64,000 nucleotides of DNA from Haliotis rubra (GCF_003918875.1 NW_025767346.1:2728001-2792000); one strand, 5' to 3'. Shown: positions 8,028 to 58,900, counted from the stretch's first letter. The notes: generated by a model from the sequence alone, not told the origin. Numbers and translations: made by a program.

Positions 8028-8061
8028 GTCGCCCCGACAGGGTATCGTATTTATATATACA

Positions 8062-30459: not shown

Positions 30460-30647
30460 TTATGCGTAGTAGTAAATGGGGTTGAGTGATGTTCCAGGAG
30501 CATAACCAAAGAAATCAAGATCCCAAGGATAGTATTTTTACAGTCGTGAGCCACGTGACTTCGGACAGCACGTGAAAGGCTTTGTATGTCAGAGTTACCA
30601 CTCTCTTTCAGTTACGCTTGTGAGCTAGGATATATAAGATAATATAA

Positions 30648-34728: not shown

Positions 34729-34775
<47 letters not shown>

Positions 34776-35868: not shown

Positions 35869-36979
35869 ATGAACCCGTGGGATCCTTATTGTCTTCTGAC
35901 CTTTATGACCTTTTTGACTGGAAGTAAGTACATTTAACATGCTGCCAGACAAATAAGGTTTTCGGGGGGAGGAGGGGGAGGAGGTAGGAGAAATAAATTT
36001 AATTTTAAAGCTGTAATGCTATTGCTGTAAATGATGTTCACTTTGCAAACAAACACGCGTATGCGTGCAGTTCTTGTGATATATCTCATATATCACACAT
36101 AAATTCGCAACCAGTATTAAGCAGTACAGTGGATTAACTGACGGGGTAGGGATCAACTCAATGGTGTCTAAGAGGCAGTAGTAATACGTGTACCAAAGAA
36201 TTATTTTGCCTGTGTGAATATTTTTACTCCTGTTCATCTTCAAAGAAATTCGAATCTGCTTCTCGAATGCCACATGTTCCACTTAGGTGTTTCGAAACTG
36301 AAATACAGTACTTAGACGTCACTGACTTAGACGTTATGTGAAATCAGTCACTATATCCGTACATCTTCACAAAGTGTCACCTGTGAAGCACAGAATACAG
36401 AAACCATGAATATGTTGTACCTGTGACGGCGCAGTGATATGTTTCTATGATATATAGTATTGGGTGCAAATATTTATATGAATCAGTCAATCCTCATTTA
36501 TATTGAATTAATATGAATTCAAGTACATGTTTTTCAGCCACTGGGGCAAGCCTGACCGCATCCCCAAGCCAAATAACTATCGGGGGCAGTAACCCAACAT
36601 CTAAGTTGACGGTAAGTTGCAGTCCAAATGCACCTGGAATCACTACATTGTATAACATAGAGATTGGCAAGAAGTCTTCTACTGGCTCTGATCAGCCTAT
36701 AATACGAATCGGAAACACAGAAACGTTAGTACAAGTGGTGGACTCAAGTCTACAACAGAGGATGACAGCCTCGGGTTCTATCAGTGGAGCAACAGGCAGT
36801 ATACAGTTCATCCTGACAGAACTGAGATGCGCTGATGCTGCCTCTACATACTACTGCAGCACGTTATACTTGACAGGAGAAGCTGGAAATGACGGGGCAT
36901 CTACTAACATCACGGCAAGAAGTGTGTCAAGTTAATATTTACTCACACTGAATCCGAAACGTTTGGTTTCCTTGAGGGA

Positions 36980-37056
<77 letters not shown>

Positions 37057-40000
37057 GTGTGTGTGTGCGAAAACATATAAATAAATATTAAATGCATTTA
37101 AATAATCTAATCAGGTGCCATTGATGCAAACCAATTGACTATCTATACACCATTTAAACAGTTCCTATTACACTCGTATACAGCATTTATAATTGTAATT
37201 GATTCTTCTATGCCGATTGCCCGAATGTTGACATACACTGCCTCTGTCTTTTCTTACAGCTTATCCAGAACAGATAGAGATGTTCCCATCTCCTGACAGG
37301 CTCCAGTATGACGATGGTGAGCTCTTGTCAATGAGATGTACAGGAAGGATTGGGAACCAGTTTGATGAGAACAACCTCCAGAACCTGTGGACATGGGAGT
37401 GGCGATCTGTAGACAACGAGTTCACCATCTGGACACGGTACCCCAACGACCAAAACATCACCTACGACAGTCCTACTTCGTCAGCGGAATGTCAGTATAC
37501 AGGGGCGTCAACACTTATACATACCTTGTCAAATCTAGACAATGGAAGACAGTTCAGGTGTTCTGTCATGAGTGCTGACTACAGCTCAAACAAGACTGTT
37601 TATATTGTAGGTAAGATGTAAGAGTTGTTATTTTTCCAACGTTAATATGTGTGCACTTTTTGCATTACAGATACTGTATACCTGGTTAAAATGTATGGAA
37701 AGCGTGAATTCATGTCTCCGATGGGTCGTGAAAATGACATTTAAACCTCTTAGATGTTATATGCCATGATGAGCTTCATGTCCTAGTCAAATGTGTTCAA
37801 CTGTTCACACCAGGACGACAAACATTCAAACAGGAAGACTACAATTACAATGGGATGAAATCGTTATCTATAGTAGGCCTATATTTGAAGAGTGTTATGC
37901 AGATGAACCTTATATGTCAGCCGGGTACACCATGCATTTTAGCAGGACAGCAACAGAAGGAAAGGATCAGGGCTGCTTCCTAACTGCCGTATTTGTTTCA
38001 GGTCAAGTACCACCAGAGGAAACATCTACTTCCGAAAAGCTTACAAGTGGTGAGTTTTGTATAACACAAAGAAAGCAAGAGTGAGTTAACATCAACAATC
38101 ATACTAAAGCATTCACCCTGGCACATATTTCACACAACGGTGGCCATACACATTACTGTCATTTTGGTGTCAAAGTGTCTTTTTTAAGTTTGGGGTATAT
38201 GCATTTCCAAATATCTTTAAAAATGAAGATGAGGGCGCAGCGTATAGTTCTTACAAGAGATTTGTTATGGCCCGTGTAAAAAATATTGACGTCTGGTCGA
38301 TGATATATATTTAGACTGAAAACAGTGAAGACAAGCGAAAGCATTTCCGTAATTGTACTCTTCCGAAATAAATGGTATAAATACCTCCTTTCAGAAGCTT
38401 CTGTAATATGAGGGATCCGTCGGTATTAATGTAGAAAATTCCAGACTACACTTGACAACGAATCGACTAAAAAGTATCAAAATATCGACAATTTCTGATG
38501 TAACACATTCCCGACAACTAGGTATTGCCAAACACAATGGTTTGACCTTCTACAAACCAGAGCAAAACAATGTATCATATACGCATGGAAACGAATAAGG
38601 GAACACTTGAAAAAAAGCGTTCCTTTATTCTTTTCCAGGTTTCTTCAGAAGCTTCGTATTGCACAGTGGGTGAAATTCTGGAAAAGACTTGTACTTTCAG
38701 GTGATCTCATGCTCGTTTCCATGAGCATAATTACAACATTGAGATACAATTAAATTAAAACGTAATGTAGCCATAGAAATACATTTCATGTTTCAAATGA
38801 CAGCGGCGTGTGTCCAAGAGAACCAGGAATCCTCTCTTGGTGTTGGAGTGGCTATAGGTGTGTGTGTGATGTTGGTTGTTGATGCCGTCTGTCTGGGTTT
38901 GGCGTTCGTCCTCAGGGACAAACTAGCAGACTGCATATCAGGTAGGTACTTTACGTCGTAATGTTTTGGGAATGTTTAAATGTTTCAAGACAGAAGTTTT
39001 ATATAGAGTTGTAACAGTTCGTAATCTATCTGTGGAAATCATGTAACATTTTGACAATTTCATCCGCATGACGATCCATCAACGAATGCTATCATGGAAC
39101 TAAACTTGATGCTGTTACAACTATGGCAACATCTGGTTCTGGATGAGAATGGTAATGTTGGCAAGGAACACTGTATTAAAACAATAACAAGAATAATGTT
39201 ATCCATGTGATGAGAGTTTGAATGATGGCAATGACCACAAAAGGATCATTAGACAAAGTCACAAATGGTGGGATGCATTAATAATGTATGACTACCTTTA
39301 TCTGCACTTCCCCAAAACAAAGTAGGGAATGGCTTGCCATGCTGCTTGGACACGTAGGACTGTTGATCTGTTGCGTGTATGCTAACCGAGTACGTCAAGC
39401 TAGTGGACGATTGATATCCGATCATGTGGATAAGGTGACCAAAACATGTGCGACATCTTATTGTTGCTCAAAGTCTGTGACCACTGAAGCTAACCCCCGG
39501 CCATGCTCACAATGTAGGTATGTATAGTTGTAACAGGTCCTAATGTATCTGGGGCGGTGGGGTAGCCTAGTGTCTAAGGCGTTTGCTCATGACGCCGAAG
39601 ACCAAATGTTCGATTCCCCACATGGGTACTATATGTGAAACCTATTTCTGGTGTCCCCCGCCGTGATATTGCTGGAATGTTCCTAAAAGCGGCGTAAAAC
39701 CAATGATAATGACTAAACACGTCTCCGATGACTGGTGATCAACCACCAAATACCAGCCATTCTCACATTGTAGCACTTATAGCCGTTCAGAAAAAGGGCA
39801 TATCAGGATGCGGATTTGACCATCGATAACCAACAGGATTCGACAGTGACGTATTCGTGTGTCAACAGTTGTAAAATCCACATGTGATGAGATCTGCCCA
39901 GACAAGACAGCCGAGTCAATAAACTAGAAACAGTAAAGGGATGTTGGTAGCTCGGAGGAAGTTCCTGGTGATCTTCATGGGGACAATTCATGTGCAGTAG

Positions 40001-40863
40001 CCCTGCATGTCATTATAATTTGTCCATTCATTAATCTGATATTCGGTTGTTACAGGACCAAAGGACACCAGTAACGCAGAGAAGGCAGTATTCTCTAAGT
40101 AGGTTCACCTTTTCCAGAATTAATACTTCCAAACATTCATCACAATGTAATAAATATCCTACTTGTAGATCGAAAATTGTTTCTAGACAAAGAGTTCTTC
40201 AATTTCTTAGGTTTGTAGGCATATCTATTCTGTAAAAATAAAAATAAAACAGTTTTGCAGCATAATAAGCATGGCCATAAAATATATCCTTTCTCAACCA
40301 CTACAGCATGCAGGCTCCTGCCACAGTGGTCGCACCTGTTGGAATCCAAACACAAGGTCAGATTTTGTCAATGTACATTATCACAATACAAGTGTCCAAC
40401 AGAAGAGAACCTAAATAGTGACACAAGAACAGAAATGCTTCTCGTTCTCCATGCTTGGTGTTCAAGCTAACAAATACTAACTGGTCAGTGTCCATGGATC
40501 AGCAGACATCTTGTCAATATTTCCTGAAGGCATGAATCCATGCATCCTCTTTCAGTCATTGGTTTGTCAGATTTTAAGCCAGATTCGCGTAAAGAAATGA
40601 ACCATCGCCGACGGGGAGTGTTAAAATACCGCTCACACCATTGAGATAGACGAGCATGACTACAAATTACCATAGTAATTGAACTGTTAAAGGAGTGGAT
40701 GTCTGAAGGACATTGTTAACGTACCTACTACACACGTTTCTTGTAGGGGTAGGCGACGAGTACGAAGTACCAATTGACAGGAAATACCTACTGTGGCCTA
40801 CAGAGAGGAGCTGCTGACGTCCCAAACACTTATGAGAAGATACGAACGTACCAGCATGTGTGA
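35869..40863 (+). CDS. Gene A: two-Ig-domain type I membrane receptor; last exon has a +1 frameshift that truncates the tail
   Basis: Exons: 35869-35923 (signal), 36538-36921 (V-like, LTVSC...LRCADAASTYYC), 37260-37610 (Ig2, SMRC...WTW...DNGRQFRC), 38002-38049 (stalk), 38804-38941 (TM GVGVAIGVCVMLVVDAVCLGLAFVL), 40056-40098, 40307-40356 and 40747 onward. An extra A at ~40782 gives DEYEVPIDRKYLLWPTERSC* (stop 40815-40817); the ancestral stop is at 40861-40863. Confidence 0.8.
36982..37067. repeat. (CT)n/(CA)n/(GT)n compound microsatellite in gene A intron
   Basis: Direct inspection. Confidence 0.95.
39551..39712 (+). mobile_element. tRNA-derived SINE (family 2), specific to gene A intron
   Basis: A-box, B-box (gttcgattccc) and family tail; absent from the gene B intron. 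Confidence 0.82.
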
Positions 40864-43800
40864 AACGAGAAGACAGTGAAGATCAACTACAAACAAACAA
40901 TCGCGTTTCGCTTTTTGCTCGGACATCAGTAGCTAACATCTAGACCCCTTCAAAACCTGAATTAAAGGACATCATAGTTCAGCGTGCAATCTCGTCTAAT
41001 CTGACCATTTCCGTGACAACTGCAACAACAGTTTCTAGTAGGACAAAATCAAAGCTCCCATTAACGACCTCAAGGCCTATACTGAGAACAAGCAAAGAAG
41101 GCATCCCCATCAAAAAGACTCCTACCGTCCATCAACTATGACCAAGATGGCTTACCTGTCACCAACTGACTCCAATCAGATATAATACTTCTGTGTCCAG
41201 CTGTATGTTTACACGACTGGCTTCATTTGCAAGGACCTAATTTGCCTTAGATCTTCTGCAGTGTATACTGAACAGGCTTATCGAATCTATTGTTAAAACA
41301 CAACTCCATATCTGTATATATGCCTCCCTACACTACCTTATACATCTACTGCTTGATAACATCAGTTGTTCTTCCACATATGATACCATTATATTAATAA
41401 GTGAGTTGATATTGCTCCAGTTGAAAATTCAAATAGCCAATAAAAACAAATTCAGAATTTGTACTTTTTTCGTCTCCTTTTCATTACTGTACACAGTTTT
41501 AACATAATTCTGTTCAGATCTTTAGATATATCTAATTATATAATGCTCAGACTTCATCTCAATGCAGAATTAAGACCCAATGATGTCTTAATCTCATCTC
41601 CAGGACATGGGGCAGTTTCTTTGTTTCAACAGTAACACATGCAAAATACAGTTCCTGTTTCTTCAAGACCCTGGCAGGTTTGTGGTCCTTAGCATGATTC
41701 GTAAACCTTACCTATACTCTTACATTCAGCCTTGAACACATAGCACCATCTGAATATCACAGTAAAACTCAGTTATCATGCTCAGTTTGTGCTCAACTGG
41801 TATGAACATGGCTGATGGCCTGATCACTGCTTGATGTGTTTAACGCAATATTCGAGCTATATGGCGGCGGTTTGTAATTAATGAAGCATGGAGCAGACAC
41901 CCCAGTGATCAACAACATGAGCATATCTATGCAATTGGGATACCATGGCATGACAATGTGTCAACCTTGATGTTTGGAACGAATAAAGAGATGTATGTTA
42001 CCCACGTTTTACGACGAACGAATCTAAAACTGATCAAAAAACTGAAATATATAACATCTCACCCAGCAGTATTCCAGTCCTATGTAGTGGGCGTGTAGAT
42101 ATTCAAGACTGGACCAAACAATCCTGTGATCGAATTTAGGTGTACACTGTTTGAGTAGAATGACATCCAATCAACCAAGTCAACAAGCCTGATCACCAAA
42201 TCAATATTTGTCACCTGCACAGATCAGTAAACGTTGCAACCAATGATGTACTTAAAATACCCACCAATCTCAGATATATACCACCAATCTCAGATATATG
42301 AGTGTAAGAAATGCTCAACAACTAATCAGTAATATAAAAAAAAGGAAAAAAGAAATTCAATACTGTGCTCGTGAAGTGTGTCAAAATAATATAATCTGCG
42401 ATCTTAACAACAGTTGTGCCCGAAATTTCCTTTGCACACAGACACATCTACGTAACGTCGTTAACGTAAGATAATAAACATACACAAATGTTAAGTTTAA
42501 TATACAACACATCATTTTCTAAGGACCATAGAAACAGTATATAGATGAAGCTATAATATTGCCGACGGTGGTATAGTACTAATGGTTATCAATTCGGTTG
42601 TACATTTAAACTCAAATCTTTCTGTCCTGCTGACCTCCATACCTACCACTACACGACTACAACTTCAAAACACACCGTGACCCTTTGCTGCACATGTTCC
42701 CCTCAACGCGATCTTAACCCACATCTTTCATAACCTACTGTACACTTTCATTCCAGTGTCGTGTTGCTTGGACCCAAGCTGCGATAACACGGCTATATCA
42801 CGTGTGTACAACAAGGAAGTATATTCTGCAGGTAGGATGTCTAATGGCGATTGACTTCATGTACAGGTATGTGAGTGTGTGTGTAGTTTGAAGACTCATT
42901 GTATTATTGGCTGTAAAGACAATATGGGAATACTTCGTATTGGTGTCCGTATTATCATTGGCATGAACACTACACAAACTCTTAACGACCCTCCACAGTT
43001 GGAAGGTATGATTATTGACTCACGCAGACTTTCCCCTCACTGACTCTGTCTCACGATGACCCGAGGTATCTTTTTACTCAGACACTGAATCTGGTGTAAC
43101 ATGTATAGTTAATACAATCTTCTTTGAGTGGCATTTTAGAACTTGGGACATGCACTATTTAGCAAACTTTATGGATAACAACTTTTTTTATTTTGTGAGT
43201 GCGACGTTTCGATACACATTCTTGTACTGTTGTCAAGCGTGTGGCGTGCGGCGTAGGCCAGTGCAGTCATCAAGGAGGTAAATTGAGCAGGGTAGGATTC
43301 TAAATAGTGGGTAAGCTGACATATACAATTGTTAGTATTATGTGCCTCCCAACACAGTTGTGACGTGTGTATCTACAGTTCTAAACGAAAGATGACTACA
43401 TGTACCTTTGTACTTATATTATATGTATTGATATATGAAATGAAATAAGAAAGTTTGTGTACAAATAGGAACTGTCGGGAACATGAAAAGTAGTATGCAT
43501 CCACCGATGATGTCTACAATTGTGACGATCAGTGACTGTTGAGAAGCTGTGTGATGAACTCTATCTTGGTTTTGTGTTGTCTTACACACCTGTAATCAGC
43601 ACTGCGTGTTACCTGTCCGTCAGTAGCTAATGTATACAGTTCTACAGTGTGTATCTATATATATATATATATACGTAACTGATCTTGTCCTCTGACGTTA
43701 AGTACAGTTCTCCGAAAGAATATTTGCTTAGTTTGAAAATATTAGTTAGAAAATATTTATTCAGTACTGCATTGAACGTAGCATTTGAACACTGCTCGTG

Positions 43801-45414
43801 TACTCTTACACTATCGCGTGTTTGAGCTGTTGATGGACGCTGCATAATTAAATTCTCCAGTTCTTGCAAAACCTTGCAGATGGAATCCATCTGAATCAAT
43901 TGCATTCATTGAAAAGAGAATATGTTACAGTTATTGTTTTACCATGCCTTCATTGTTTGTTTGTGTCAGTTCACCAACCTTCCTACATGAACTTGTAAAT
44001 CATAAATCGTAGTTACGATTTGTTAGTCATATGCTATATACTCCAGTTCAATAATATCACATAAAATAGTTTATAAGTAATGAAAATATTCTTTGTTTCG
44101 CTATTGTTTGTCTGACGACACTCGGGCGAAACTTGATTGACGCGTGTTTTATATTTCGTAAGTTATTGATCATGCAAGTAAGTTATATACGAAACCAAAA
44201 ATGTGTATATCCACATATAACAACTGCTACACATTCTCCTATAAGGCAGCAGCTTGATAGTCAAGTTGTTTAATTGTGGCAAATGTAAAGGTAAAGTTTG
44301 ATCCCATCTAAAAATATAACCTAACCTTATACTACCAGGCATTCAATAACTAACAACATACATGAACATGTTTCAGGAACAGAAAGCCGCACCTGTGAGA
44401 AAAAAAGCATGAACCCGTGCGATCCTTTTTGTCTTCTGATCTTTATGACCTTTCTCTCTGGAAGTAAGTACACACAACGGTGGTGGTGGTGGTGTGTGTG
44501 TGTTTAATGTGAATCATCTTCACTTTGCAAACAATCAGACGCGTAAGCGTGCAGTTCTTGTGATATATCTCATATATCACACATAAATTCGCAACCAGTA
44601 TTAAGCAGTACAGAGGATTAAATGAAGGGGGTAGGGATCAAAGTCAACTGTGTCTAAGAGGCAGTGGTGATAAAATACCAAAGAATTATTTTGCCTGTGT
44701 GAATATTTTCTTTCCTGATCATCTTCGAAATTCGAATCTGCTTCTCGAATGCCACATGTTCCACTTGGGAGATCCGAAACTGAAATACATTACTTAGACG
44801 TCACTGTCCTAGACGTTATGTGAAATCAGTCACTATATCCGTACATCTTCACAAAGTGTCACCTGTGAAGCACAGAATACAGAAACCATGAATATGTAGC
44901 ACCTGTGACGGCGCAGTGATATGTTCCTTTGCTATATAGTATTGGGTGCAAATATTTATATGAATCAATCAATCCTCATTTATGTTAATTAATATGAATT
45001 CAAGTACTTGTTTTTCAGCCACTGCGGCAATCCTGTTCCTATCACCGAGTCAAATAACAATCGGGGGCAGTAACCCAACATCTCAGTTGACTGTCACGTG
45101 TAGTCCAGATACACTTATGGCAACATTGTATTACATAGCGATCGGCAAGAAGTCTTCTACTGGCCATAATCAGCCTATAATACGAATGACCAACGAAGAT
45201 TCGTCAGTTCAAGTAGTGGACACAAGTCTACAACAGCGGATGACAGGTTCTACCAGTGCAGCAACAGGCAGTATACAGCTCATCCTGACAGATCTGACAT
45301 GTACTGATACTGCCTCTACATACTACTGCAGAACGTTTTACTTGAATGGAGAAACTGGAAATGATGAGACAACGGCCAACATCACTGCTAGAAGTGCGTC
45401 ATGTTAATATTTAC

Positions 45415-45797
45415 GCGAATGTATCGATACATCGATACATTTTTACTGACGATACGATACGCGATACATGCTTGCGTGTATCGATTCCTATTTTTAAAAC
45501 TTTATCGATTCAAATTTTTATGCTATATCCAACTCCATCAAAGTCTTGATAGTAAAATTATACCAGATGGCTCCGATAAATAGATGAAGCTAGCTTTACT
45601 TAAAAAATAAGTTGGAAACTAACAGCTTTTGTGATTGGCTAGACTATTTAGATGGACCAATCAGCGAGCGCGTACGTTGCCGGTAAGGTAATGCTATGAA
45701 AAGGCGCGATAATTATGTATCGCGATACGTATCGTATCGTGACCTTAAAATCGTGATACGTATCGTATCGTGAGATTGGTGTATCGTGACACCCCTA
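45415..45797. mobile_element. hAT-like non-autonomous element, left end truncated
   Basis: 8-bp TSD atatttac (45407-45414 / 45798-45805), right end ...gacaccccta, subterminal cgata/tatcg repeats. Confidence 0.72.
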
Positions 45798-47264
45798 ATA
45801 TTTACCAAAATGTATATGTTACATCCAATCTATGAGACCGTCGACTGCCCTTCTTCGCTTATTGCCCCGAATGTTGATATACAGTGTCTCTATCTTTTCT
45901 TACAGCTTACCCAGAGCAGATAGAGATGTTCCCATCTCCTGACAGGGTCCAGTATGACAATGGTCAGGTTTTGTAAATAAGATGTACAGGCAGGATTGGG
46001 AACCAGTTTGATGAGAACAACCTCCAGAACCTGTGGACATGGGAGTGGCGATCTGTAGATACCGAGTTCATCTCCTGGACACTGTACCCAAACGACCAAA
46101 ACATCACCTACGACCGTCCTACGCCGTCAGCGGAATGTCAGTATCAAGGAGCATCAACACTGGTTCACACACTCTCGAATCTAGACAATGGGAGACAGTT
46201 CAGGTGTTCTGTCGTGAGTGCTGACTACAGCTCAAACAAGACTGTTTATGTTATTGGTAAGATGTAATAGTTGTTATTTTTTCAACCTTAATATGTGTTT
46301 CGGTTTCTGCATTATATGCACCTCGTCATAAATATCATGTCTCCGATTTATGGAGAAAATGACATTTAAACCTGTTAGATATTCTATCCCATGAAGAGCT
46401 TCGTGTTCTGGTCAAATGTATTCAACTTTTCATACCAGGACGACAAACAGTCAAACAGGAAGGCTACAATTACATTGGGATGAAATCGTTATCAAAATTA
46501 GGCCTCTATTTGAAGATTGTTATGCAGATGAACCTTATGTCAGCCGGGTACACCATACATGTTAGCAGGACAGCAACAGAAGGAAAGGATCAGGACTACT
46601 TCCTAACTGCTGTATTTGTTTCAGGTCAACAACCACCAGGGGAAACATCTACTTCCGAAACGCCTACAAGTGGTGAGTTTTGTATAACAGAAAGAAAGCA
46701 TGAGTGGTAAATATAAGTTTACATCGACGATCAAACTAAAGCAGTCACCCTGGCACATTGCCAGAGTGTCGTCTTCAGTCTAAAAACATTGCCATTCTTT
46801 AATGCTATTCGTGTATATCTTATTGGACCCAAAAGTTAGTGATTGTTCCTGATCAAATATAGTGCCTCTTTTAATACCAGGACGACAAACATTCAAATAG
46901 GAAGGCTATTATTACATTGATAAGAAATCGTTGTTCACCTTGCTTAAATTACGTGTATATTCTAAGTTTGCTACACACATGAACTTATATGTACACGCGG
47001 TACATCTTGCATGTCAGCAGGACAACAACAGAAGCAAAGTTTCAGGTTTACTTACTAACTGTCATATCATTTTTTGCAGGTGAACAACCGCCACGGCCTA
47101 CTACTCCTTCAGAAAAGCCTGCATGTGGTGAGTTTTGTATAGCTGAACGGAAGCAACTATCAATTCAGGAAATCATCAGGAGTGTGAACTTTGGAAATGT
47201 CTTGCCTATATTTTTTTTAAAGGATATTTATATAGCGGATATATCCACGCAACAAATGCATGCT

Positions 47265-47635: not shown

Positions 47636-50600
47636 CTATATACTCTTTACTGATGTCATCTTTACCCTTATCAGTGGTATTCTTCCCTCCCTTTCTTAAC
47701 CTTCAATCTGCATCATTTTTCTACCTCCAACCATTGCTGCCCCAATAGTTTGATTACAATCCCACATCCACTGTTATGTTTCGTTTATGTTTCGTTTATG
47801 GTGGATGACATCCTTGTATTTGAGCTAGATAGGTTGAATTGTTAATGCCAGCATTCGCTTCATCGATCGGTATACATATATTCATCGTGAAGTATACAGA
47901 GGATACCTTAAGCTTCTTTGTTTGACGTACTTTCATGTGTTCTGTCCATCATACAGATGTTAAGGAAGGATACTTTGCACATGAGTTTGGCCTGTAAGTA
48001 GGGCCTGGAGATTCAGTGACTGAAGCACTGAAAAAGGATCAGTGTAAGGCAGTCTCATGGCAGAATGATAAAAATGAGATATTTGGACTGATCACTCGTT
48101 CCAGGACCTCATAATAGATATGTTAAGGGGTTAAGTTATATGCTACAAGAACATTTCCCAATATCTTTTAAAAAAGGAGGGTATAGTGTTTACAAGAGAT
48201 TTCGTATGGCCAGGTAAAATATAGTTAGGCTAAATGGACACAAGCGAAGGCCTTCACGTACCAGCACTTGGTCTAAATACGTCCTTTCAGAAGCTTCTGT
48301 AAAATGCTGGATTAGTCGGTGCAAACATGAGACAGTAACACATTCCTGACAACTAGATATTTCCCAAACACAATGATTTGATCTTCTACTGAAACTTAAC
48401 AAAATAAGGTATTATGGTCTCAGCATTTGGTTACAATAAATTAAACTGCCATTTAGCCATAGAAATACATTTGATGTTTCAAATGACAGCGACGTGTGTC
48501 CAAGAGAACCAGGAACCCTCTTTTGGTGTTGGAGTGGCTATAGGTGTGTGTGTGATGCTGGTTGTTGATGCCATCTGTCTTGGCTTGGCGTTCGTCTTCA
48601 GGAACAAACTAGCAGACTGCATATCAGGTAGGTACTTTACGTGATAATGTTTTTGGAATGTTTAAAAGTTTCAAGACCGAAGAAGGTATATACAGTAGTA
48701 ACAGATCGTAATCTATCTGTGGAAATCATGTAACATTTTGACAATTTCATCCGCATGACGATCCATCAACGAATTCTATCATGGAACTAAACTTGATGCT
48801 GTTACAGCTATGGGAACATCTGGTCCTGGATGAGAATGGTAATGTTGGCAAGCAACACTGTATTAAAACAATAACAAAGAATAATGTTATCCATGAAAGT
48901 TTGAATGATGGCAATGACCACAAAAGGATGATTAGACAAAGTCACAAATGGTGGGATAGCATTAATAATGTGTGACTACCTATATCTGCATTTCCCAAAA
49001 ATAAAGTAGGGAATAGCTTGCCATGCTGCTTGGACAAATAGGACTGTTGACCTGCTGCTAACCGAGTACATCACGCTAATGGTCGATTGATATCCGATCA
49101 TGTGGATAAGGTGACCAAAACATGTGCCACATCTTATTGTTGCTCAAAGTCTGTGACCATTGAAGCTAACTCCCCCTATCACTGTTGATCAACCCCAACA
49201 TACCGGCCATGCTCACAATGTAGCACTTACAACCGATCAAAAAGGACATATCAGGAACAGACCTGGCCATCGATAAAGTCCAGGATTCGTCAGTGACGAG
49301 TTCGTGTTACCACAGTTCTATGGTCCACAGGTGATGAGCTCTGCCAAGACAAGACAGTCGAGTCAATAAACTAGAAACAGTAAAGGGATGTTAGTAGCTC
49401 GGGGGAAGTTCCTGGTGATCTCCGTGGGGACTTTTCATGTGTTGTAGCCCCTACATGACATTTTATTTGTCCATTCGTCAATTTGATAATCGGTTGTTTC
49501 AGGACCACATACCGGCAATGCTCACAATGTAGCACTTACAACCGGTCAAAAAGGACATATCAGGAAACGAACCTGGCCATCAATAAACTGCAGGATTCGT
49601 CAGTGACGAGTTTTGGTTACCACAGTTAAATGGTCCACAGCTCTGCCCAGACAAGACAGTCGAGTCAATAAACTAGAAGCAGTAAAGGGATAACGGTAGC
49701 TCGGGGGAAGTTCCTGGTGATCTTTATGGGGACATTTCATGTGTGGTAGCCCCTGCATGTAATTTTATTTGTCCATTCATGAATCTGTTTTTCGGTTGTT
49801 TCAGGATCAAATGACACCAGTAACGCAGAGAATCCAGTATTCTCTAAGTAGGTTCACCTTTTCCAGAATTAATACTGCCAAACATTTATCACAAGGTAAC
49901 ACATATACTAAATGTAAACTGAAAATTGTTTCTGTATACTAAATGTAAACTGAAAATTGTTTCTGGACAAAGAGTTTTTAAATTTCATTGGTTTGTTTGC
50001 TTATTCATTCTGTAAAAAAAATGGCAGCATGATGGGCATTGCCATAACATTTATGCTTTCTCAACCACTACAGCATACAGGCTCCTGCCACAGTGGTCGC
50101 ACCTGGTGGAATCCAAACACAAGGTCAGATTTTGTCAATTTACATTACCACAATACAAGCGTCCAACACAAGAGAACCTAAATAGTGACACAAGAACATA
50201 TATGTTCTCGTTCTCCATGTTTGGTGTGCAAGCTAACAAATACTAAGTGGTCAGTGTCCATGGATCAGCTGACATCTTGTCAATATTTCCTGTAGGCATG
50301 AATCCATGCTTACTCTTTCAGTCATTGGTTTGTCAGATTTTAAGCCAGATTCGCTTAAAGGGATGAACCATCGCCGACGGTGAGTGTTCAAATAACGCTC
50401 ACACCATTGAGATAGACGTGTAGAACTATAAATTGCCATGGTAATTGAACTGTTGAAGAAGTGTGTGTCTGAAGGACATTGTTAACATACTCACTACACA
50501 CATTTCTTGTAGGTGTCGGTTACGAGTACGATGTTCCCGTGAACAGTTATGACTACGATGCCTTACAGAGAGGAGCTGCTGACGTCACCAACACTTATGA

Positions 50601-52780
50601 GAAGATACGAACATATGAGCATGTGTGAAACGAAAAGAATGACAGTGAAGATCAACTACTAAATAACAATCGCGTTTTCTTTTTGCTCAGACATCAAACG
50701 CTAACATCTAGACCCCCCTCAAAACCCGAATTAAAACTTTAAGGCATCACAGTTCAGCATCCAATCTCGAAATCAACTTTATCTGTCTATGTCCGTGGAC
50801 TGTTGTGGACTGTTGTCTAGTAGGACAAAATCAAAGCTCCTACTAACGACCTAAAAGACCTATAGTGAGAACAATCCAAAAGGGCATCCCCATCAAAAAA
50901 GACTCCAACCATCCATCAACTGTGACCAAGAGTATGACACATCTCCAGCTTACCTGTCACCAACTGACTCCAATCAGATATAATACTTCTGTGTCCAGCT
51001 GTATGTTTACACGACTGGCTTCATTTGCAAGGACCTAATTTGCCTTACATCTTCTGCAGTGTATACTGAACAGGCTAATGGAATCTATCGTTAAAACACT
51101 ACTTCATATCTGTATATATGCCTCCCTACACTACCTTATACATCTACTGCTTGATAACAGTGTTACCTTCTACACATCTACTTCCTCATTGTAAATAAAG
51201 AAGTTGTTCTTCCACATAAAATACCATTACATTAATAAGTGAGTTGATGTTGCTTCAGCTGAAAATTCAAATAGACAATACAAACAAAGTCAGAATTAGT
51301 ACTTTTTTGTATCTCATATACATTACTGTACACAGTTTTAACATAATTCTGTACAGATCTTTAGATATAAATAATTATATAATGCACAGACCTTATCTCA
51401 AGACAGAATTAGGACCCAGTGCTGTCTTAATCTCAGCTCCAGGACATGGGGCAGGCTCTTTGTTTCAACAGTAACACATGCAAAATTCAGTTCCTGTTTC
51501 TTCAAGACCCTGGCAAGTTTGGGGTCCTTATCATGATTCGTTAACCTTACCTATACTCTTATATTCAGCCTTGAACACATTGTATCATCGGAATATTACA
51601 GTCACACCTCTGCTATAATTCACAAAAATTAAATAACATTAACCTGATACTGAAGTTCACTTACATAACATGGACTGATTTGTAGAACAGTTTTCATGCT
51701 GGGTTTGTGCTCAACTGGTCTGAACATGGCTGATGGCCTGACCACCCTTTAATGTGTTGCTTTTTTCTTTTGTTTAACGCAATATTCCAGCTATATGGCG
51801 TCGCTTTGTAATTATGCTTTGAAGCATGGAGCAGAGAGTCGAGTGATCAACAGCATGAGCATATATCTATGCAAGTATGATACCATGGCATGACAAGGTG
51901 TCAACCTTGATGTTTGGAACGAATAAAGAGATGTAGGATACACACGTTTTACGACGAATGAATCCAAACTGATCAAGAACTGAAATATATAACATCTCAC
52001 TCAGCAGTATTTAGATATTCCAGACTGGACCAGACAATCCTGTGATCGATATTATGCATACACTGTTTAAGTAGAATGACATGCAATCAACCAAGTCAAC
52101 CAGCCTGGTCACCAAACCAATATCTGTCGCCTGCATAGATCAGTAAACGTTGCAACCAGTGATATACTTAGAATTCACATATTTACCACCAAACTCAGAG
52201 ATATGAGTGTGAGAATGCTCAACAATTAATCAGTTAGTTTTTCAAAAAAGAAATTCAATACGGTTTACGCGAAGTGTGTCAAACTGATATAATCTAGGAT
52301 CTTAACAACAGTTGCTGCTCGAAATTTCCTTTGCACAGAGACACATCTAAGATAATAAACATACACAAATGTTAAGTTTAATATACAACCCACCATTTTC
52401 TAAAGACGTAGGAAACAGTATATTGATGAAGCTATGATATTGCCGACGGTGGTATAGTGCTAATGGTTATCAGTTCGGTTGTACATTCAAACACAGACAT
52501 CTTTCTGTCCTGCTGATCTCCATACCTACCACTACACTTCTACAATTTCAAAACACACCGTTACCCTTCGCTGGACATGTTCCCCTCAATGCGATCTTAA
52601 CCCACATCTCCTGTACACTTTGAATCCAGTACCGTGTTCCTTGGACCCAAACAATAAATTGTAAAGTTATTTTTACTCCTGCGATAACACGGCTATAGCA
52701 CGTGTGTACAACAAGGAAGTATATTCTGCAGGTTGGATGTCTAATGGCGATTGACTTCATGTACAGGTATGTGTGTATGT

Positions 52781-54355
52781 ACGGAAGCGTAGTAGGGCCA
52801 CGGTGAAAATTTTTTTTCGTCTTACTATCTCCTACGTAGGACTTAGTATATCCTACGTAGCACATACTATCTCCTACGTAGGACTTAGTATCTCCTACGT
52901 ATCTCGGACTTAGTATCTCCTACGTAGGAGTTAGTATCTCCTAAGTGGGCATCTCCTACGTAGGACATAGTATCTCTTACGTAGGACTTAGTATCTCCTA
53001 CGTAGTACTTAATATTTCCTGTAGGAGATGATCGATATACGTTTATATGGATTAATCTGAAACGGTCGACTTAAAGCCCCAGACACGCACACAATCTCCT
53101 GTTTCACTGTTTTAGTCACTGTAAGAGTCTATAGTCATTCGTTTCATTCACTATTAGAGTCTACTGTCATGTGTTTCAATTTACTATTGGAGTCTACTGT
53201 TTCCTTCACTATTAGAGTCATGTGTTCAACTAATTGTTGCACATAAGTACTGTGTTGGACCGACTGTTATACTTTACTGCCTTGCGTTCAGTTTGCTCTA
53301 CTATTACGCGTTGCAGTTAGTTCACTGTTATATGTTGCTCTTTGTTACACTTTACTATTATGCATTGGATATTTCAGAGGTCGTTGCACATGAATCATAA
53401 TCTGCGTGTACAGACGTGTCTTAGACTATAGGTGGCAACCTATGTGTACGTATCCCCTTATATTTATACAAATAACTATAATGACAATTCTTTGCCTTTT
53501 TGAATTTCGTATTGTTTTACGCCGCACTCAACACTTGTCCACCCCAGTCAAGTCAACCTGTAAACAATTACGAATAAAACCGCAAACGAGCGTTGCATCC
53601 GATCCAACCTAGCCCCATCAAGACAAACAACAACTTGCGGAGGTCGTGTTATAACCCGAGTTTCATATCACAACCTCATCTCAACCATCCCACCCCCCTC
53701 TGTGTGCGTGTGTATCTGTGTGTTTGTGTGTGTGAATAGATGTATGTATGATAGATTTAACATAACCATACCCAAACCTCCATAACTGCAATTAGAACAG
53801 GGTCCACGTCACCCTAACGTAATACACACACAATAACACTGTACAGTACCACTGCGTTAGTGTCATGAATATTCACTGACTCACATTTCGATTATCTAAC
53901 GTCCTGCATAGCCAAACATTTCTCAACTTAATAACCATCCTTAAAAAGGAGATACTAAGTCCTACGTAGGAGATACTAAGTCCTACGTAGGAGATACTAA
54001 GTCCTACGTAGGAGATATTAAGTCCTACGTAGGAGATACTAAGTCCTACGTAGGAGATAGTATGTCCTACGTAGGAGATATTAAGTCCTACGTAGGAGAT
54101 ACTAAGTCCTACGTAGGAGATACTAAGTCCTACGTAGGAGATAGTATGTCCTACGTAGGAGATATTAAGTCCTACGTAGGAGATACTAAGTCCTACGTAG
54201 GAGATACTAAGTCCTACGTAGGAGATAGTATGTCCTACGTAGGAGATACTAAGTCCTACGTAGGAGATACTAAGTCCTACGTAGGATATAGTATGTCCTA
54301 CGTAGGAGACAGTGACCCAAAAAAAATTTTCACCGTGGCCCTACTACGCTTCGTA
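52781..54355. mobile_element. Non-autonomous foldback-type DNA transposon with 21-bp subterminal arrays
   Basis: TIRs tacg(g)aagcgtagtagggccacggtgaaaattttttt. Inverted arrays of gagatactaagtcctacgtag at 52825-53025 and 53948-54310. Absent from the paralogous sites. Confidence 0.88.
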
Positions 54356-55902
54356 TGTATCTGTGTGTGTAGTTTCAAGAGTCATTGTATTGATGGCTGT
54401 AAAGACAATTTGGGAATGCTTCGTATTGGTGTCCATATCAGCATTGGAATGAACACTACAAAGACCCTTAACATCGCTCCACAGTTAGGCAATAGGCTTA
54501 TTGTCTCAGGTAGACTTTGCTCTACTGACTCTGTGTCGCCATGACCCGAGCTATCTTTTACTCAGACATTGCATCTGGTGTAACATGTATAGGTAATACA
54601 ATCTTCTTTGAGTGGCATTTTAGAAGTTGGGACATGCACTATTGAGCAAACTTTATGGATAACAACTTTTTTTTATTTTGTGAGTGCGACATTTCGATAC
54701 ACATTCTTGTACTGTTGTCAAGCGTGTGGCGTGTGGCGTAGGCCAGTGCAGTCATCAAGGAAGTAAATTGAGCAGGGTAGGATTCTAAGGAGTGGGTAAG
54801 CTGACATATACAATTGTTAATATTATGTGCTTCCCAACACAGTTGTGACGTGTGTATCTACAGTTTTAAACGAAAGATGACTACATGTACCTTTGTACTT
54901 ATATTATATGTATTGATATATGAAATAAAATACCAAAGTTTATCTACAAATAGGAACTGTCGGGAACATGAAAAGTAGTATGCATCCACCGATGGTGTCT
55001 ACAATTGTGACGATCAGTGACTGTTGAGAAGCTGTGTGATGAACTCTACCTTTGTTTTGTGTTGTCTTACACACCTGTAATCAGCACAGCGTGTTACCTG
55101 TACGCCAGTAGCCGATGTGTACAGTTCTACAGTGTGTATCTATATATATACGTAACTGGCCTTGTACACTGACGTTAAGTACAGTTCTCCGAAAGGATAT
55201 TTGCTTAGTTTGAAAATACTGCAACGGACATAGCATGTAATGAACACTGCTCGTGTACTCTTACACTATCGCGTGTTCAGGTAATTTAGTTTGTTAATGG
55301 ACGCTAAGCATAATTTAATTCTCCAGATAAATATGTATAAGGCTTGCAAAATACTGTAAATTTAAGTGCAGATGGAATCTATCTGAATCAACTCCGTTCA
55401 TTGAAAAGAGAATATGTTACAGCTATTGTTTTACCATGCCTTCATTTTTGTGTGTGTCAGTTCACCAACCTTCATACATGAACTTGTAAATCATAAATCG
55501 TAATTACGATTTGTTAGTCATATGCTATATACTGTTATCTCCAGTTCAATCATATAACATAAAATATTTTATAAGTAATGAAAATATTCTTTGTTTCGAT
55601 ATTGTTTGTCTAACGCCACTCAGGTGAAACTTGATGGACGCGTGTTTTATATTTCGTAAGTTATTGATCATGCAAGTAAGTTATATACTAAACCAAGCAT
55701 GTGTATATCCATATGTAACAACTGCTACACATTCTCCTCTTAGGCAACGGCTTGATAGTCAAGATGTTGAAATGTGGCAAATGTAAAGGTAAAGTTTGAT
55801 CTCATGGGAAAATATAACCTTATACTACCAGAGGGATTCCATAACTAACGACATACATGAACATGTTTCAGGAACAGAAAGTCGCACCTGACAGAAAAAA
55901 GT

Positions 55903-58900
55903 ATGAACCCGTGCGATCCTTATTGTCTTCTGATCTTTATGACCTTTCTCTCTGGAAGTAAGTACACTCAACGTGCTGCCAGACAAATAAGGTTTTCGTG
56001 GGGGGGTGCAACCAGTATTAAGCGGTACAGTGGATTAACTGACGGGGGTAGGGATCAACTCATTTGTGTTTAAGAAGCAAGTAATTATTTTGCCTGTGTG
56101 AATATTTTTACTCCTGTTCATCTTCAAAGAAAGTCGAATCTACTTCTCGAATGCCACATGTTCCACTTGGGTGTTTCGAAACTGAAATACAGTACTAACA
56201 CGTCACTGACCTAGAGGTTATGTGAAATCAGTCACTATATTCGTACATCTTCACAAAGTGTCACCTGTGAAGCACAGAATACAGAAACCATGAATATGTA
56301 GTACCCGTGATGGCGCAGTGATATGTTCCTATGCTGTATAGTATTGGGTGCAAATATTTATATGAATCAATCAATACTCATTTGTATTGAATTAATATGA
56401 ATTCAAGTACTTGTTTTTCAGCCACTGGGGCAAGCCTAACCGCATCACCAAGCAAAAAAACAATCAGGGGCAGTAACCCAACATCTCAGTTGACTGTAAG
56501 TTGCAGGCCAAATGCACCTGGGATAACACAGGTGTTTACCATAGAGATCGGCAAGAAGTCCTCTACTGGCTCTGATCAGCCTATAATACGATTGACCAAC
56601 ACAGATACGTCAGTACAAGTAGTGGACACAAGTCTACAACAGCGGATGACAGCCTCAGGTTCTATCAGTGGAGCAAGAGGCAGTATACAGTTCATCCTGA
56701 CAAACCTGAGATGTGCTGATGCTGCTTCTACATACTACTGCACAACAATATACTTGACGGGGTCATCTGGAAGTGATGAGGCAACTACCAACATTACAGC
56801 TAGAAGTGCGTAATGTTAATATTTACTCCGACTGAATCTGAAACGTTTTGAATTCTTGAGATACACACACACATACTCATACACACATCCTATATGTGTG
56901 TGTGTATATGTACACTATATTGTATGTTTGTGTATATATAGATATTTGACATTTAAGTTGTTTCACTGCATTATTTAGTGTTATCTCTGCACACGTGTCT
57001 TGTATGTACTTGCATTAGTTACAATTTAAACAATCTAATCAGGTGCTATTCATGCAAATCAAATAGATATTTATAAAACCTTTAGACAGTTCCTATTACA
57101 TCTGAAGTATTTAAAATTGTTACTATATTGGCAATATTGTCGTTCTTCTTCTCCTATTTCTGGAGTGTTGACTTACAATGTCTATATACTTTCTTACAGC
57201 TTACCCAGAGCAGATAGAGATGTTCCCATCTCCTGACAGGCTGCATTATGACGATGGTCAGCTCATCTCATGTGAGCGTTCAGTCAGAAAATTGACAAAA
57301 CAAGACCGACTCTGAGCACTAATTGAAGGTTTCATTGAAGCAAACTAAAGTTTACTAAAATCACCGTAAAATAAGGTGAGATGAGTACGGTTGCCGGGGT
57401 CGTTACAACAGACACACAACATAGTTCATATGTTGAACACACTTGAAAGGTCCACAATGACTGGCTAAGTCAGTATCTGGTGTAACCGCCTCGCACTTGG
57501 ACCAGACGTCTGATTCTCTGTTGGGGGATCTGCTGCCACTCATCATGCAATGCATGGTTCAATTCCTGACGGTTCTGAACTAGAGGATCCCTTGCTCTCA
57601 CCCTACGTCCCAAATTGTCCCACAAATGCTCAATAGGATTCATGTCTGGACTTCTGGCTGGCCATGGTAGTGTCTCAATGGCGTTGTGTTGGATATGCTG
57701 AACAACAGCTCGAGCACGATTTGGTCTTACATTATCGTCCATGAAGACTGGATGTGTGGCGAGAGCATGGTTATCGAAATAAGGCACTACGGCACCGTCC
57801 AGGATCAAGTTCGGGTACCTCTGTCCATTCAATGGACTATGATGAGGTCAAGTTTACGATCATAGGAACAACGTCCCCACACCATGACGGATCCACCCTC
57901 AGAACTCGTGCCCTCCCGCCTGTATGATGCAGCAAAATCGGCTTTCATCGGACCAATGGATCCTTTCCATGTCCTCAGGTTCCAGCAAGCACGTGCTTGG
58001 CACCAGGATAAATGGGCATGGTGGTACAGATTTGTGAGGAGTGGACGTCTGATTGGTCGTCTTGCTCTCAATCCTGCAGAATGTAGGCGTCGTCTGATGG
58101 TGCTGATGGACACACTGTTGTATGGATGCCATCTATGTCGCAGCTGTGTACAAGTGGACATTGGGCTTCGTCTGGCATGGCGTACAAAAGCCATCTTCCA
58201 TGTCATTGTTTCTTTCTGGGACGTCCAGACCTCGGTGCATCCTTCACTTCACCGGTAGCAGTATGCTTACCTATCAGCCTGCTGATGACAGTACGATTAA
58301 TGTCCAGTTGTGCTCCAATAGCATGACATGACATACCCGTCTGGTGCATACCAATACTTTGCCATTATTGGTTCAGAGGCACTGGACGCTTGGACATTTC
58401 ACTGGTTCGTCAAAAAAAAAGCTTAATTTCTGCCTACAATCACATTTTAGCTGTCTGCCAACATAACATACGCCAAAGGGGGCTATGTGCATACTGCATT
58501 TATAGCTTAAGGCAAGCATGCACGTGCAGCTCGGAACATCTGTGGTATTATGTTTACAGATGGTGTCGTATATTACATATGTACGTGTAGTGTAAAAAGA
58601 ACGAAAATCATATTTCTACTTTGACTTTTGGTGGTGTGATACTTTTGACAAGGTGTATAGATGACTTTAAAAGTATACCTGGTTCAAATTTATGCAAAAC
58701 GGGAATTCATATCTCCGATTTCTCGTGAAAATGACATTTATTCTATTCCATGAAGAGCTTCATGTTCTAGTCAAATGTATTCAACTTTTCATACCAGGAC
58801 GACAAACATTCAAACAGGAAGGCTACAATTACAATGGGATGAAATCGTTATCTATATTAGGCCTATATTTGAAGAGTGTTATGCAGATGAACCTTATATA

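What the first reader, a model, noticed from the sequence alone, without database searches (positions are those of the whole stretch)
36538..56805. V-domain differences concentrate in three CDR-equivalent patches
Hand alignment: A versus B V domains differ at ~40 of 128 positions, including two in-frame indels, while their Ig2 domains differ at ~17 of 117. A versus C differ at ~23, about two-thirds of them in three patches. These are after the first Cys (NAPGITTLYN / DTLMATLYY / NAPGITQVFT), at C'-C'' (IGNTETL / MTNEDSS / LTNTDTS) and after YYC (STLYLTGEAGNDGAS / RTFYLNGETGNDETT / TTIYLTGSSGSDEAT). Framework blocks such as IGKKSSTG and SLQQRMT are invariant. Inference: diversifying selection on a ligand-binding face.
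Basis: partly seen in the sequence, partly recalled or inferred. Interest (0 to 1): 0.75.

Follow-up and report, generated by a model that had tools for sequence, protein, structure and literature searches.

The report
Abalone Ig receptor genes, variable loops
Three neighbouring abalone genes of an unnamed antibody-like receptor family differ mostly in the three loop regions that antibodies use for binding, but the evidence that selection drives this is only moderate, and all three copies here carry damaging mutations.

Summary
The window is Haliotis rubra. It holds three tandem paralogues (A, B, C) of an uncharacterised Ig receptor family that my searches found almost only in Haliotis. The architecture is leader, V-set domain, second Ig domain, stalk, transmembrane segment with an Asp, and an ITAM-like tail.

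- **Counts:** V domains differ at 40/127 (A/B, two in-frame indels) and 23/127 (A/C) positions. Ig2 A/B differ at 17/117.
- **Structure:** an AlphaFold model (pLDDT 90.7, best matches VHH/VH) places the patches at CDR1/C-strand start, C'-C'' and the F-G hairpin.
- **Independent support:** nineteen other family V domains are most variable in the same patches.

- Whole-exon dN/dS is below 1, and patch dN/dS is about 1-1.35 (not significantly above 1). dS is equal in patches and framework.
- Site models favour a small class with omega above 1 (p about 1e-4). With separate trees for each half, the signal reduces to sites 107 and 109.
- Gene conversion between paralogues is evident, which weakens these tests.
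- One of the 17 Ig2 differences is a stop codon in B. C's Ig2 exon is cut by a Tc1 element. A has a tail frameshift.
- Intron 1 is less diverged than the V exon; intron 2 is more diverged.

The parts
35869..35923 (+). Gene A leader (signal peptide) exon, MNPWDPYCLLTFMTFLTG plus 1 nt, donor GTAAGT
36538..36921 (+). Gene A V-set exon (127 full codons, phase 1-1), intact ORF
36627..36656 (+). Patch 1 in A (residues 30-39, NAPGITTLYN): BC loop plus start of strand C, the CDR1 equivalent. Family-wide only 36-39 vary; APGIT is conserved.
36708..36728 (+). Patch 2 in A (residues 57-63, IGNTETL): end of C' and the C'-C'' loop, the CDR2 equivalent. Almost all changes are nonsynonymous.
36858..36902 (+). 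Patch 3 in A (residues 107-121, STLYLTGEAGNDGAS): end of F, FG turn and start of G, the CDR3 equivalent. It holds the best-supported selected sites, 107 and 109.
37260..37610 (+). Gene A second Ig (C2-like) exon, intact
38800..38958 (+). Gene A transmembrane exon (approximate limits), TM segment with an Asp
40744..40863 (+). Gene A last exon (approximate limits). A 1-nt insertion near 40782 shifts the frame, so the Tyr motifs are lost in this assembly. Other runs contain unitigs lacking that base.
44409..44463 (+). Gene B leader exon (approximate limits)
45019..45393 (+). Gene B V-set exon (124 codons, two in-frame deletions), longest and fastest branch
45906..46256 (+). Gene B second Ig exon with an in-frame TAA at 45974-45976. 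The NCBI model LOC124256788 (115 aa) ends there.
48486..48629 (+). Gene B transmembrane exon (approximate limits)
50512..50628 (+). Gene B last exon with YDAL-x10-YEKI
55903..55957 (+). Gene C leader exon (approximate limits)
56422..56805 (+). Gene C V-set exon, a mosaic. Codons 30-70 are identical in DNA to a paralogue on another contig (L003), and the 3' end is nearly identical to L002.
57200..57270 (+). Remnant of gene C's second Ig exon (first ~23 codons)
57271..58672 (-). Tc1/mariner-like element replacing the rest of C's Ig2 exon (DDE_3 transposase ORFs at 57470-58206)
60499..60642 (+). Gene C transmembrane exon (approximate limits)
63080..63196 (+). Gene C last exon: YEVP, YDAL-x10-YETI, YQNV

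Best explanation
A, B and C are tandem duplicates of a germline-encoded, type I Ig-superfamily receptor family, so far unnamed, that I found almost only in abalone. The architecture is signal peptide, V-set domain, C2-like Ig domain, Pro/Thr stalk, a transmembrane helix containing an Asp, and a tail with YxxL-x10-YxxI (ITAM-like) plus YxNx.

The V framework is under purifying selection. Three segments tolerate or favour replacement: the C-terminal half of CDR1, the C'-C'' region, and the outward-facing residues of the F-G hairpin. Variants of these segments are passed between paralogues as short gene-conversion tracts, so each gene carries its own combination.

Shown here: the counts, the fold, the location of variability, uniform dS, the mosaic tracts and the lesions. 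Inferred: that the variable segments form the ligand-binding surface; that a few sites (107, 109, probably 57-63) are positively selected while the rest of the patches drift near neutrality; and that the family signals through tyrosine phosphorylation, plausibly in immune-type recognition.

In this window the pattern is partly contaminated by decay. B has a nonsense codon, C a Tc1 insertion, and A a tail frameshift if that base is real.
For: - Species and gene models: P0001 (H. rubra LOC124256788) equals gene B across the V/Ig2 splice and stops at B's TAA.
- Family: related proteins occur in H. rubra, rufescens, cracherodii and asinina with full-length architecture. A profile search of 1.84 billion representatives gave only 20 hits. 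All hits looked up with E<1e-10 that carry a name (9 of 11; two short fragments are unnamed) are Haliotis 'uncharacterized' proteins.
- Fold: AF2 pLDDT 90.7 with strands A, B, C, C', D, E, F, G. Foldseek's top hits are VHH/VH, probability 1.0, TM about 0.7.
- Variability. Positions 107/109/111 vary while 108/110 are conserved, which indicates one exposed face of strand F.
- Rates: patches have dS 0.278 and dN 0.271; framework has dS 0.274 and dN 0.099. Framework omega is 0.50, significantly below 1, and patch omega is 1.35.
- Site models: M2a gives omega 2.86 for 11.5% of sites (p=4e-4), and M8 against M7 gives p=3e-5. Top sites are 107, 109, 58, 39, 112 and 122.
- Robustness: the signal persists without the window genes or the damaged copies (p=0.007-0.015). 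The Ig2 control is negative.
- Patch 2: omega far above 1 in non-window sequences (p=5e-4).
- Conversion: C is identical to L003 over codons 30-70 (58 consecutive variable sites, permutation p<0.0005).
- Constraint on A: its terminal branch has omega 0.29.
- Expression: a probable RNA run covers only the exons, at 90% or more likeness.
Against: - Patch-wide omega is not significantly above 1.
- Patch 1 and patch 3 averages are about 1.
- With separate trees for each half, the half with patches 1 and 2 shows no significant selection.
- In the subset analyses essentially a single site (107) carries the signal.
- 30% of informative site pairs fail the four-gamete test, so single-tree likelihood-ratio tests are liberal.
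- The codon-model code is my own (F3x4, 8 beta classes) and was not checked against PAML.
- Several highly variable positions lie outside the patches, at 4, 7, 10, 26, 28, 50-51 and 98. Positions 50-51 and 98 sit in loops at the opposite end of a V domain.
- No model coordinates were available, so a single contiguous surface was not shown.
- No ligand, tissue or signalling data exist.
- All three window copies are damaged in this assembly.
Confidence: 0.6

Rival explanations
1. Relaxed constraint only. The three patches are structurally permissive loops and strand edges that drift neutrally while the framework is conserved. No diversifying selection acts, and the significant site-model tests are artefacts of gene conversion and small samples.
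For: - Patch dN is about equal to dS (0.271 vs 0.278).
- Patch omega is 1.35 (p=0.15 against 1), with P1 at 1.09 and P3 at 1.05. In non-window sequences it is 1.28 (p=0.33).
- The partition with P1 and P2 is not significant.
- Recombination is evident.
Against: - M1a, which already allows neutral sites, is rejected in favour of M2a on the full set, on matched subsets and on the 3' partition with its own tree.
- Site 107 shows six amino acids among 13 sequences, flanked by invariant YYC and a conserved Thr.
- Patch 2 has about a dozen replacements against one synonymous change.
- The Ig2 control, which has the same history, is negative.
Confidence: 0.3
2. Pseudogene decay. A, B and C are dead copies, and their V differences are neutral accumulation after inactivation, so they say nothing about function.
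For: - B has a TAA in Ig2 and is annotated as a 115-aa fragment.
- C's Ig2 is destroyed by a Tc1 element.
- A has a 1-nt insertion in its last exon.
- B's terminal branch has omega 2.14, above background (p=0.004) and not different from 1, and half of its changes lie outside the patches.
- No NCBI protein matching A or C appeared in the searches.
Against: - All three V exons keep open frames and splice sites.
- A's branch has omega 0.29, significantly below 1, and C's is 0.5.
- The same patch pattern is seen in 19 V domains of annotated genes in four species, most of them full-length models.
- A's frameshift may be an assembly or allelic indel, because unitigs without the base exist.
- Decay does not explain the concentration of A/C differences in the patches.
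Confidence: 0.1
3. Targeted mutation. The patches are mutational or conversion hot spots, so both silent and replacement changes pile up there without any selection on the protein.
For: - Conversion tracts cover patches 1 and 2 (C/L003) and patch 3 (C/L002).
- dS in the V exon (0.2-0.3) exceeds the divergence of intron 1 (0.07-0.08).
Against: - Family-wide dS is the same in patches and framework (0.278 vs 0.274).
- In patch 2, dS is close to zero (0.043) while dN is 0.27.
- A pure mutational hot spot would raise dS as well.
Confidence: 0.05

Closest known systems
Novel immune-type receptors (NITRs) of bony fish
   Same: Germline multigene clusters of type I receptors with an N-terminal V domain, often a second Ig domain, a TM segment and tyrosine-based tail motifs. 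Variation is concentrated in CDR-like regions (from my own knowledge of the family).
   Different: NITR V domains carry a J-like FGxG motif and the canonical C-strand Trp. The abalone V has neither (G strand ASTNITAR, Ile in place of Trp). No sequence relationship was detected: the profile search found only molluscan proteins. This is convergent at most.
KIR / LILR / SIRP / CD300-type paired receptor clusters of mammals
   Same: Tandem arrays that evolve by duplication, gene conversion and pseudogenisation. Replacement changes focus on the ligand-binding face. Activating signalling goes through ITAMs and charged TM residues.
   Different: In those families the ITAM usually sits on a separate adaptor. 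Here the ITAM-like motif and a TM Asp are in the same chain. The domain types differ (KIR uses C2/I-set domains) and there is no homology.
CgIgR, the ITAM-bearing Ig receptor of the oyster Crassostrea gigas (PMC6994640)
   Same: A molluscan membrane Ig receptor with an ITAM in its own tail. The oyster motif DYTEL...PETPYEKL resembles the abalone DYDAL...IPNTYEKI. It was shown to bind bacteria and recruit Syk.
   Different: CgIgR has five Ig domains and is not described as a diversified multigene family. The abalone proteins have a V-set plus one C2-like domain. No sequence match to oyster CgIgR was tested here.
FREPs of Biomphalaria glabrata and VCBPs of amphioxus/Ciona
   Same: Invertebrate IgSF families with high sequence diversity concentrated in the N-terminal Ig/V domains. 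Gene conversion has been proposed as a source of FREP diversity.
   Different: FREPs and VCBPs are secreted and end in fibrinogen or chitin-binding domains. The abalone genes end in a TM segment plus a Tyr-motif tail (or FN3 in some members), and no fibrinogen or chitin-binding domain is present. Only germline variation is shown here.

Membership tests
V-set immunoglobulin domain | Two-sheet Ig sandwich with extra C' and C'' strands and a B-F disulfide | tested here: met
   The AF2 model (pLDDT 90.7) has strands A, B, C, C', D, E, F, G and a short C'' bridge at 65-66. Cys27 and Cys106 are invariant. Foldseek's top 50 hits are all antibody or VHH variable domains, probability 1.0.
V-set immunoglobulin domain | D-x-(A/G)-x-Y-Y-C motif before the second Cys | tested here: met
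   D99-A-A-S-T-Y-Y-C106 is conserved in all 22 V domains. The PDB profile hits align exactly on this stretch of antibody light chains.
V-set immunoglobulin domain | Conserved Trp in strand C | tested here: not met
   Strand C reads T/Q-L/V-Y/F-N-I-E-I-G-K-K, with no Trp in any of the 22 sequences.
V-set immunoglobulin domain | Pfam PF07686 match above the gathering score | tested here: not met
   Only B matches, at 18.3 bits against a cut-off of 26. A, C and the full-length relatives give nothing.
ITAM-bearing receptor | YxxL/I - 6 to 12 residues - YxxL/I in the cytoplasmic tail | tested here: met
   C has YDAL-QREAVDVPNT-YETI and B has YDAL-QRGAADVTNT-YEKI; family proteins are the same. The motif is lost in A through the frameshift. 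The acidic residue at -3 of the first Tyr in the consensus quoted in PMC6994640 is Arg/Ser/Asn here, so the motif is ITAM-like and not classical.
ITAM-bearing receptor | Tyrosine phosphorylation and Syk-family kinase recruitment | not testable with these tools
   Needs biochemistry.
Gene family under diversifying (positive) selection | dN/dS above 1 over the putative binding region | tested here: inconclusive
   Patch omega is 0.98 (NG86) and 1.35 (ML, p=0.15 against 1). Patch 2 alone is far above 1 (p=2e-4 to 5e-4), and patches 1 and 3 are about 1.
Gene family under diversifying (positive) selection | Site-class models with omega above 1 fit better than neutral ones | tested here: met
   M1a/M2a p=4e-4, M7/M8 p=3e-5, M8a/M8 2dlnL=16. 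Subsets give p=0.0006-0.015. The Ig2 control is negative.
Gene family under diversifying (positive) selection | Signal robust to recombination | tested here: inconclusive
   With separate trees, the 3' half keeps the signal (p=3e-4, sites 107 and 109) and the 5' half does not (p=0.25). No GARD or population data were available.
NITR (teleost) | V domain with a J-like FGxG motif; vertebrate orthology | tested here: not met
   The G strand has no FGxG. All relatives found are molluscan.
FREP / VCBP | C-terminal fibrinogen or chitin-binding domain, secreted | tested here: not met
   C-termini are a TM segment plus tail, or FN3.

The most novel reading that the evidence does not exclude
Abalone carry a lineage-specific, germline-diversified V-type receptor system. 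CDR-equivalent cassettes are shuffled among dozens of paralogues by short gene-conversion tracts. Crippled tandem copies such as B and C persist because their intact V exons serve as donors of binding-site variants, a germline analogue of the pseudo-V donor pools of birds. The intact members signal through their own ITAM-like tails in immune or allorecognition.
Probability: 0.12. Interest if true: 0.8.

Novelty: new member of a known kind. Interest (0 to 1): 0.5.

Why it matters
Diversified V-type receptors outside vertebrates are few: VCBPs, FREPs, Dscam and some urochordate and agnathan receptors. They inform how binding-site diversity evolved before rearranging antigen receptors.

This abalone family is annotated only as 'uncharacterized protein'. 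It combines a true V-set fold, CDR-like variability, exchange of variable segments between paralogues, and an ITAM-like tail in one chain.

If the selection signal holds up, it would give gastropods a candidate polymorphic recognition-receptor family. That is relevant to abalone disease (withering syndrome, herpesvirus, Vibrio) and to comparative immunology. If it does not hold up, it is an ordinary fast-evolving tandem Ig gene cluster with permissive loops.

Tried and rejected
- **Pfam on the V and Ig2 exons and on full-length relatives:** no match above threshold, so the fold had to come from structure prediction.
- **Word-based protein search with the 140-aa V ORF:** only two fragments, because of the length filter. 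Longer family proteins used as queries solved this.
- **The look-up of encoding contigs:** failed for five proteins, four not on record (three of them labelled isoform X2) and one with a gene range too long. This limited the codon data set to 13 V exons.
- **Read laying:** gave only short Logan unitigs. No splice junctions, no allele phasing and no way to tell alleles from paralogues.
- **Mutational hot-spot idea:** rejected because dS is uniform.
- **A, B and C as collapsed haplotypes:** rejected. They lie in tandem on one contig, 8-11 kb apart, with different indels and insertions.
- **Mapping variable sites on 3D coordinates:** not possible, because model coordinates are not exposed. I used secondary structure, IMGT-style counting from the Cys, and strand periodicity instead.
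- **Literature:** two searches found no description of this family.
Full report
**What is there**

The window is from Haliotis rubra. A protein search with the V ORF returned LOC124256788 (P0001, 115 aa). It is identical to gene B across the predicted V/Ig2 splice and ends at B's in-frame stop.

tblastn of the exon ORFs and of family proteins against the window shows three tandem copies: A at 35.9-40.9 kb, B at 44.4-50.6 kb and C at 55.9-63.2 kb. An Ig-less remnant lies at 15.3-21.1 kb.

Each copy has the following exons:
- a leader exon;
- a V exon (A 36538-36921, B 45019-45393, C 56422-56805; phase 1-1, with CAG acceptor and A|GT donor conserved in all 17 V-exon hits examined);
- a second Ig exon;
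- one or two Pro/Thr stalk exons;
- a TM exon whose helix contains an Asp;
- tail exons ending in YEVP, YDAL-x10-YE(K/T)I and YQNV.

**Check of the observation**

- A/B differ at 40 of 127 positions, with a 1-codon and a 2-codon in-frame deletion in B. A/C differ at 23 and B/C at 43.
- Ig2 A/B differ at 17 of 117.
- The three quoted patches are residues 30-39, 57-63 and 107-121, a quarter of the domain. They hold 15 of 23 A/C differences, 20 of 40 A/B and 20 of 43 B/C (Fisher p between 7e-6 and 1e-4).

Because the patches were drawn from these same sequences, I repeated the test on 19 distinct V domains from other family genes in four abalone species. Entropy is 0.92 in the patches against 0.48 outside (p=2e-4), and 10 of the 20 most variable positions are in the patches (p=0.008).

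Two refinements come from that test.
- In patch 1 the loop core APGIT is conserved family-wide, and only positions 36-39 vary.
- There are additional variable positions outside the patches: 4, 7, 10, 26, 28, 50-51, 98 and 122.

**Fold**

An AlphaFold2 model of A's V domain, built with the 22-sequence alignment, has pLDDT 90.7 and pTM 0.84, with strands A 3-8, B 22-29, C 36-45, C' 51-58, D 75-82, E 85-93, F 102-111 and G 115-126. Foldseek's best PDB matches are camelid VHH and antibody VH domains (probability 1.0, TM about 0.7). At sequence level only the DxAxYYC stretch is recognisable, and Pfam V-set is below threshold.

Counting from the Cys residues:
- patch 1 is the CDR1 equivalent, running into strand C;
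- patch 2 is the end of C' plus the C'-C'' loop (CDR2);
- patch 3 is the end of F, the FG turn and the start of G (CDR3).

Positions 107, 109 and 111 vary while 108 and 110 are conserved.

**Selection tests: pairwise estimates**

Nei-Gojobori estimates for the whole V exon give dN/dS of 0.67 (A/B), 0.34 (A/C) and 0.96 (B/C), with dS of 0.20-0.31.

I extracted 13 complete V exons with DNA: A, B and C plus ten from loci L001-L007 in H. rubra, cracherodii, rufescens and asinina. Over all pairs:

| Region | dS | dN | dN/dS |
|---|---|---|---|
| Patches | 0.278 | 0.271 | 0.98 |
| Framework | 0.274 | 0.099 | 0.36 |

There is no mutational hot spot. The framework is constrained, and the patches evolve on average at the neutral rate.

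**Selection tests: codon models**

I used my own maximum-likelihood codon models (GY94, F3x4).

| Model | lnL | Notes |
|---|---|---|
| M0 | | omega 0.71 |
| M1a | -2122.87 | |
| M2a | -2115.13 | omega 2.86 for 11.5% of sites, p=4e-4 |
| M7 | -2125.20 | |
| M8 | -2114.85 | p=3e-5 against M7 |
| M8a | -2122.87 | |

- Sites with posterior above 0.9 under M8 are 39, 58, 107, 109, 112 and 122. Of the 18 sites above 0.5, 11 are in the patches.
- The signal survives removal of the window genes or of the damaged copies (p=0.007-0.015), but it is then carried mainly by site 107.
- The Ig2 exon, used as a control, has omega 0.39 and no signal (p=0.46 and 0.10).
- Fixed-partition fits give omega 1.35 for the patches (p=0.15 against 1) and 0.50 for the framework. 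P1 is 1.09 and P3 is 1.05. P2 has essentially no synonymous change (p=2e-4 on all 13 sequences, p=5e-4 on non-window sequences only).

**Recombination**

The V exons are mosaics.
- C is identical to a paralogue on another contig (L003) across codons 30-70. That is 58 consecutive variable sites (permutation p<0.0005), flanked by 13-27% divergence. C's last 20 codons match L002.
- Thirty per cent of informative site pairs fail the four-gamete test.
- With separate trees for codons 1-66 and 67-127, only the 3' half remains significant (p=3e-4, sites 107 and 109, omega about 6). The 5' half gives p=0.25.

Positive selection is therefore reasonably supported at two sites just after YYC, suggestive in patch 2, and unproven elsewhere.

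**Introns**

Intron 1, between the leader and the V exon, is only 7-8% diverged among A, B and C, against 14-18% for the V exon. The first 150 nt of intron 2 are effectively unalignable (44-55% mismatch, with a (CT)32 microsatellite in A). Other non-coding blocks range from 7 to 25%. A/B non-coding K80 is 0.10 overall. A/C is 0.08 in the 5' blocks and 0.21-0.25 in the 3' blocks.

**Lesions**

- B carries a TAA at 45974-45976 in Ig2.
- C's Ig2 exon is cut after about 23 codons by a Tc1-like element at 57271-58672.
- A has a 1-nt insertion near 40782 that removes the Tyr motifs. Unitigs lacking that base exist in other runs, so this may be an allele or an assembly error.
- Branch models give omega 2.14 for B (above background, p=0.004; not different from 1), 0.29 for A and 0.5 for C.

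Part of the A/B contrast therefore reflects relaxed constraint on B.

**Family context**

- A profile search of 1.84 billion representatives found only 20 proteins. All hits looked up with E<1e-10 that carry a name are Haliotis 'uncharacterized' proteins, two short fragments are unnamed, and weak hits are bivalve Ig proteins.
- Members carry different C-termini: a TM segment plus ITAM-like tail, a different TM with a long tail, an FN3 domain, or tandem V domains.
- Unitig depth over the V and Ig2 exons is several-fold higher than over the introns in three organisms, which indicates many copies. A probable RNA run covers only the exons.
- Two literature searches found no description of the family. 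The nearest molluscan analogue is the oyster CgIgR, a five-Ig receptor with an ITAM that recruits Syk (PMC6994640).

**Verdict**

This is a new, uncharacterised member of the known kind 'germline-diversified V-type Ig receptor multigene family'. Its CDR-like variability is generated and shuffled by gene conversion. Positive selection is credible at a few sites, and the three copies in this window are damaged.

Noticed in passing
window 45974-45976: In-frame TAA in gene B's second Ig exon (Ser in A). The NCBI model LOC124256788 ends here as a 115-aa fragment without a signal peptide.
   Followed up: yes
window 40775-40790: 1-nt insertion in gene A's last exon relative to B, C and the Ig-less copy. 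It shifts the frame and removes the YDAL/YEKI/YQNV motifs. Unitigs lacking one base at 40782 are present in other runs, so it may be polymorphic or an assembly error.
   Followed up: partly
window 57271-58672: A Tc1/mariner-like element on the minus strand (DDE_3 transposase ORFs at 57470-58206, themselves broken into two frames) replaces most of gene C's Ig2 exon.
   Followed up: partly
window 38850-38900, 48540-48590, 60550-60600, 19380-19420: The predicted transmembrane helix of every copy contains an Asp (VMLVVDAICLGLAF). This is the kind of charged TM residue seen in vertebrate signalling adaptors, here in the same chain as the ITAM-like motif.
   Followed up: no
window 46537-46704 and 46986-47156; 58910-59062 and 59382-59555; 37914-38078: B and C each have two copies of the Pro/Thr stalk exon region, whereas A has one. 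A lacks about 1 kb that is present in C at 59163-60164.
   Followed up: no
window 39507-39840: Extremely high-copy repeat, with summed unitig depth in the millions in all DNA runs. Flanking loose ends read GGTTCGATTCCC, as in a tRNA-derived SINE.
   Followed up: no
window 52821-53020 and 53947-54309: 21-nt tandem repeat arrays (9.6 and 17.3 copies) in the B-C intergenic region. One gives a spurious ORF of SYVGDTK repeats.
   Followed up: no
window 1-6200 and 29632-35000: Large segmental duplication within the window. The same ORFs occur at 1047-1505 and 30007-30459, and the same Pro-rich repeat ORFs at 2302-2925 and 31655-32628. An assembly gap of 148 N at 29484-29631 sits just before the second copy.
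   Followed up: no
window 6953-10349: Retroelement remnants on the minus strand (long ORFs that look integrase- and polymerase-like; not scanned against a family library).
   Followed up: no
L007:10842-12723 (H. asinina): Four V exons repeated head to tail every 539 bp, each with its own 158-nt intron. They are annotated as one 'mucin-4-like' protein of three and a half V domains (P0017).
   Followed up: partly
L004 (H. rubra contig QXJH01002651.1): A 23-kb contig made of about three tandem units in which each Ig2 exon matches in two reading frames with a break near codon 81. One V exon also has an extra Tyr codon (YYYC). These are probably further pseudogenes or a poorly assembled array.
   Followed up: partly
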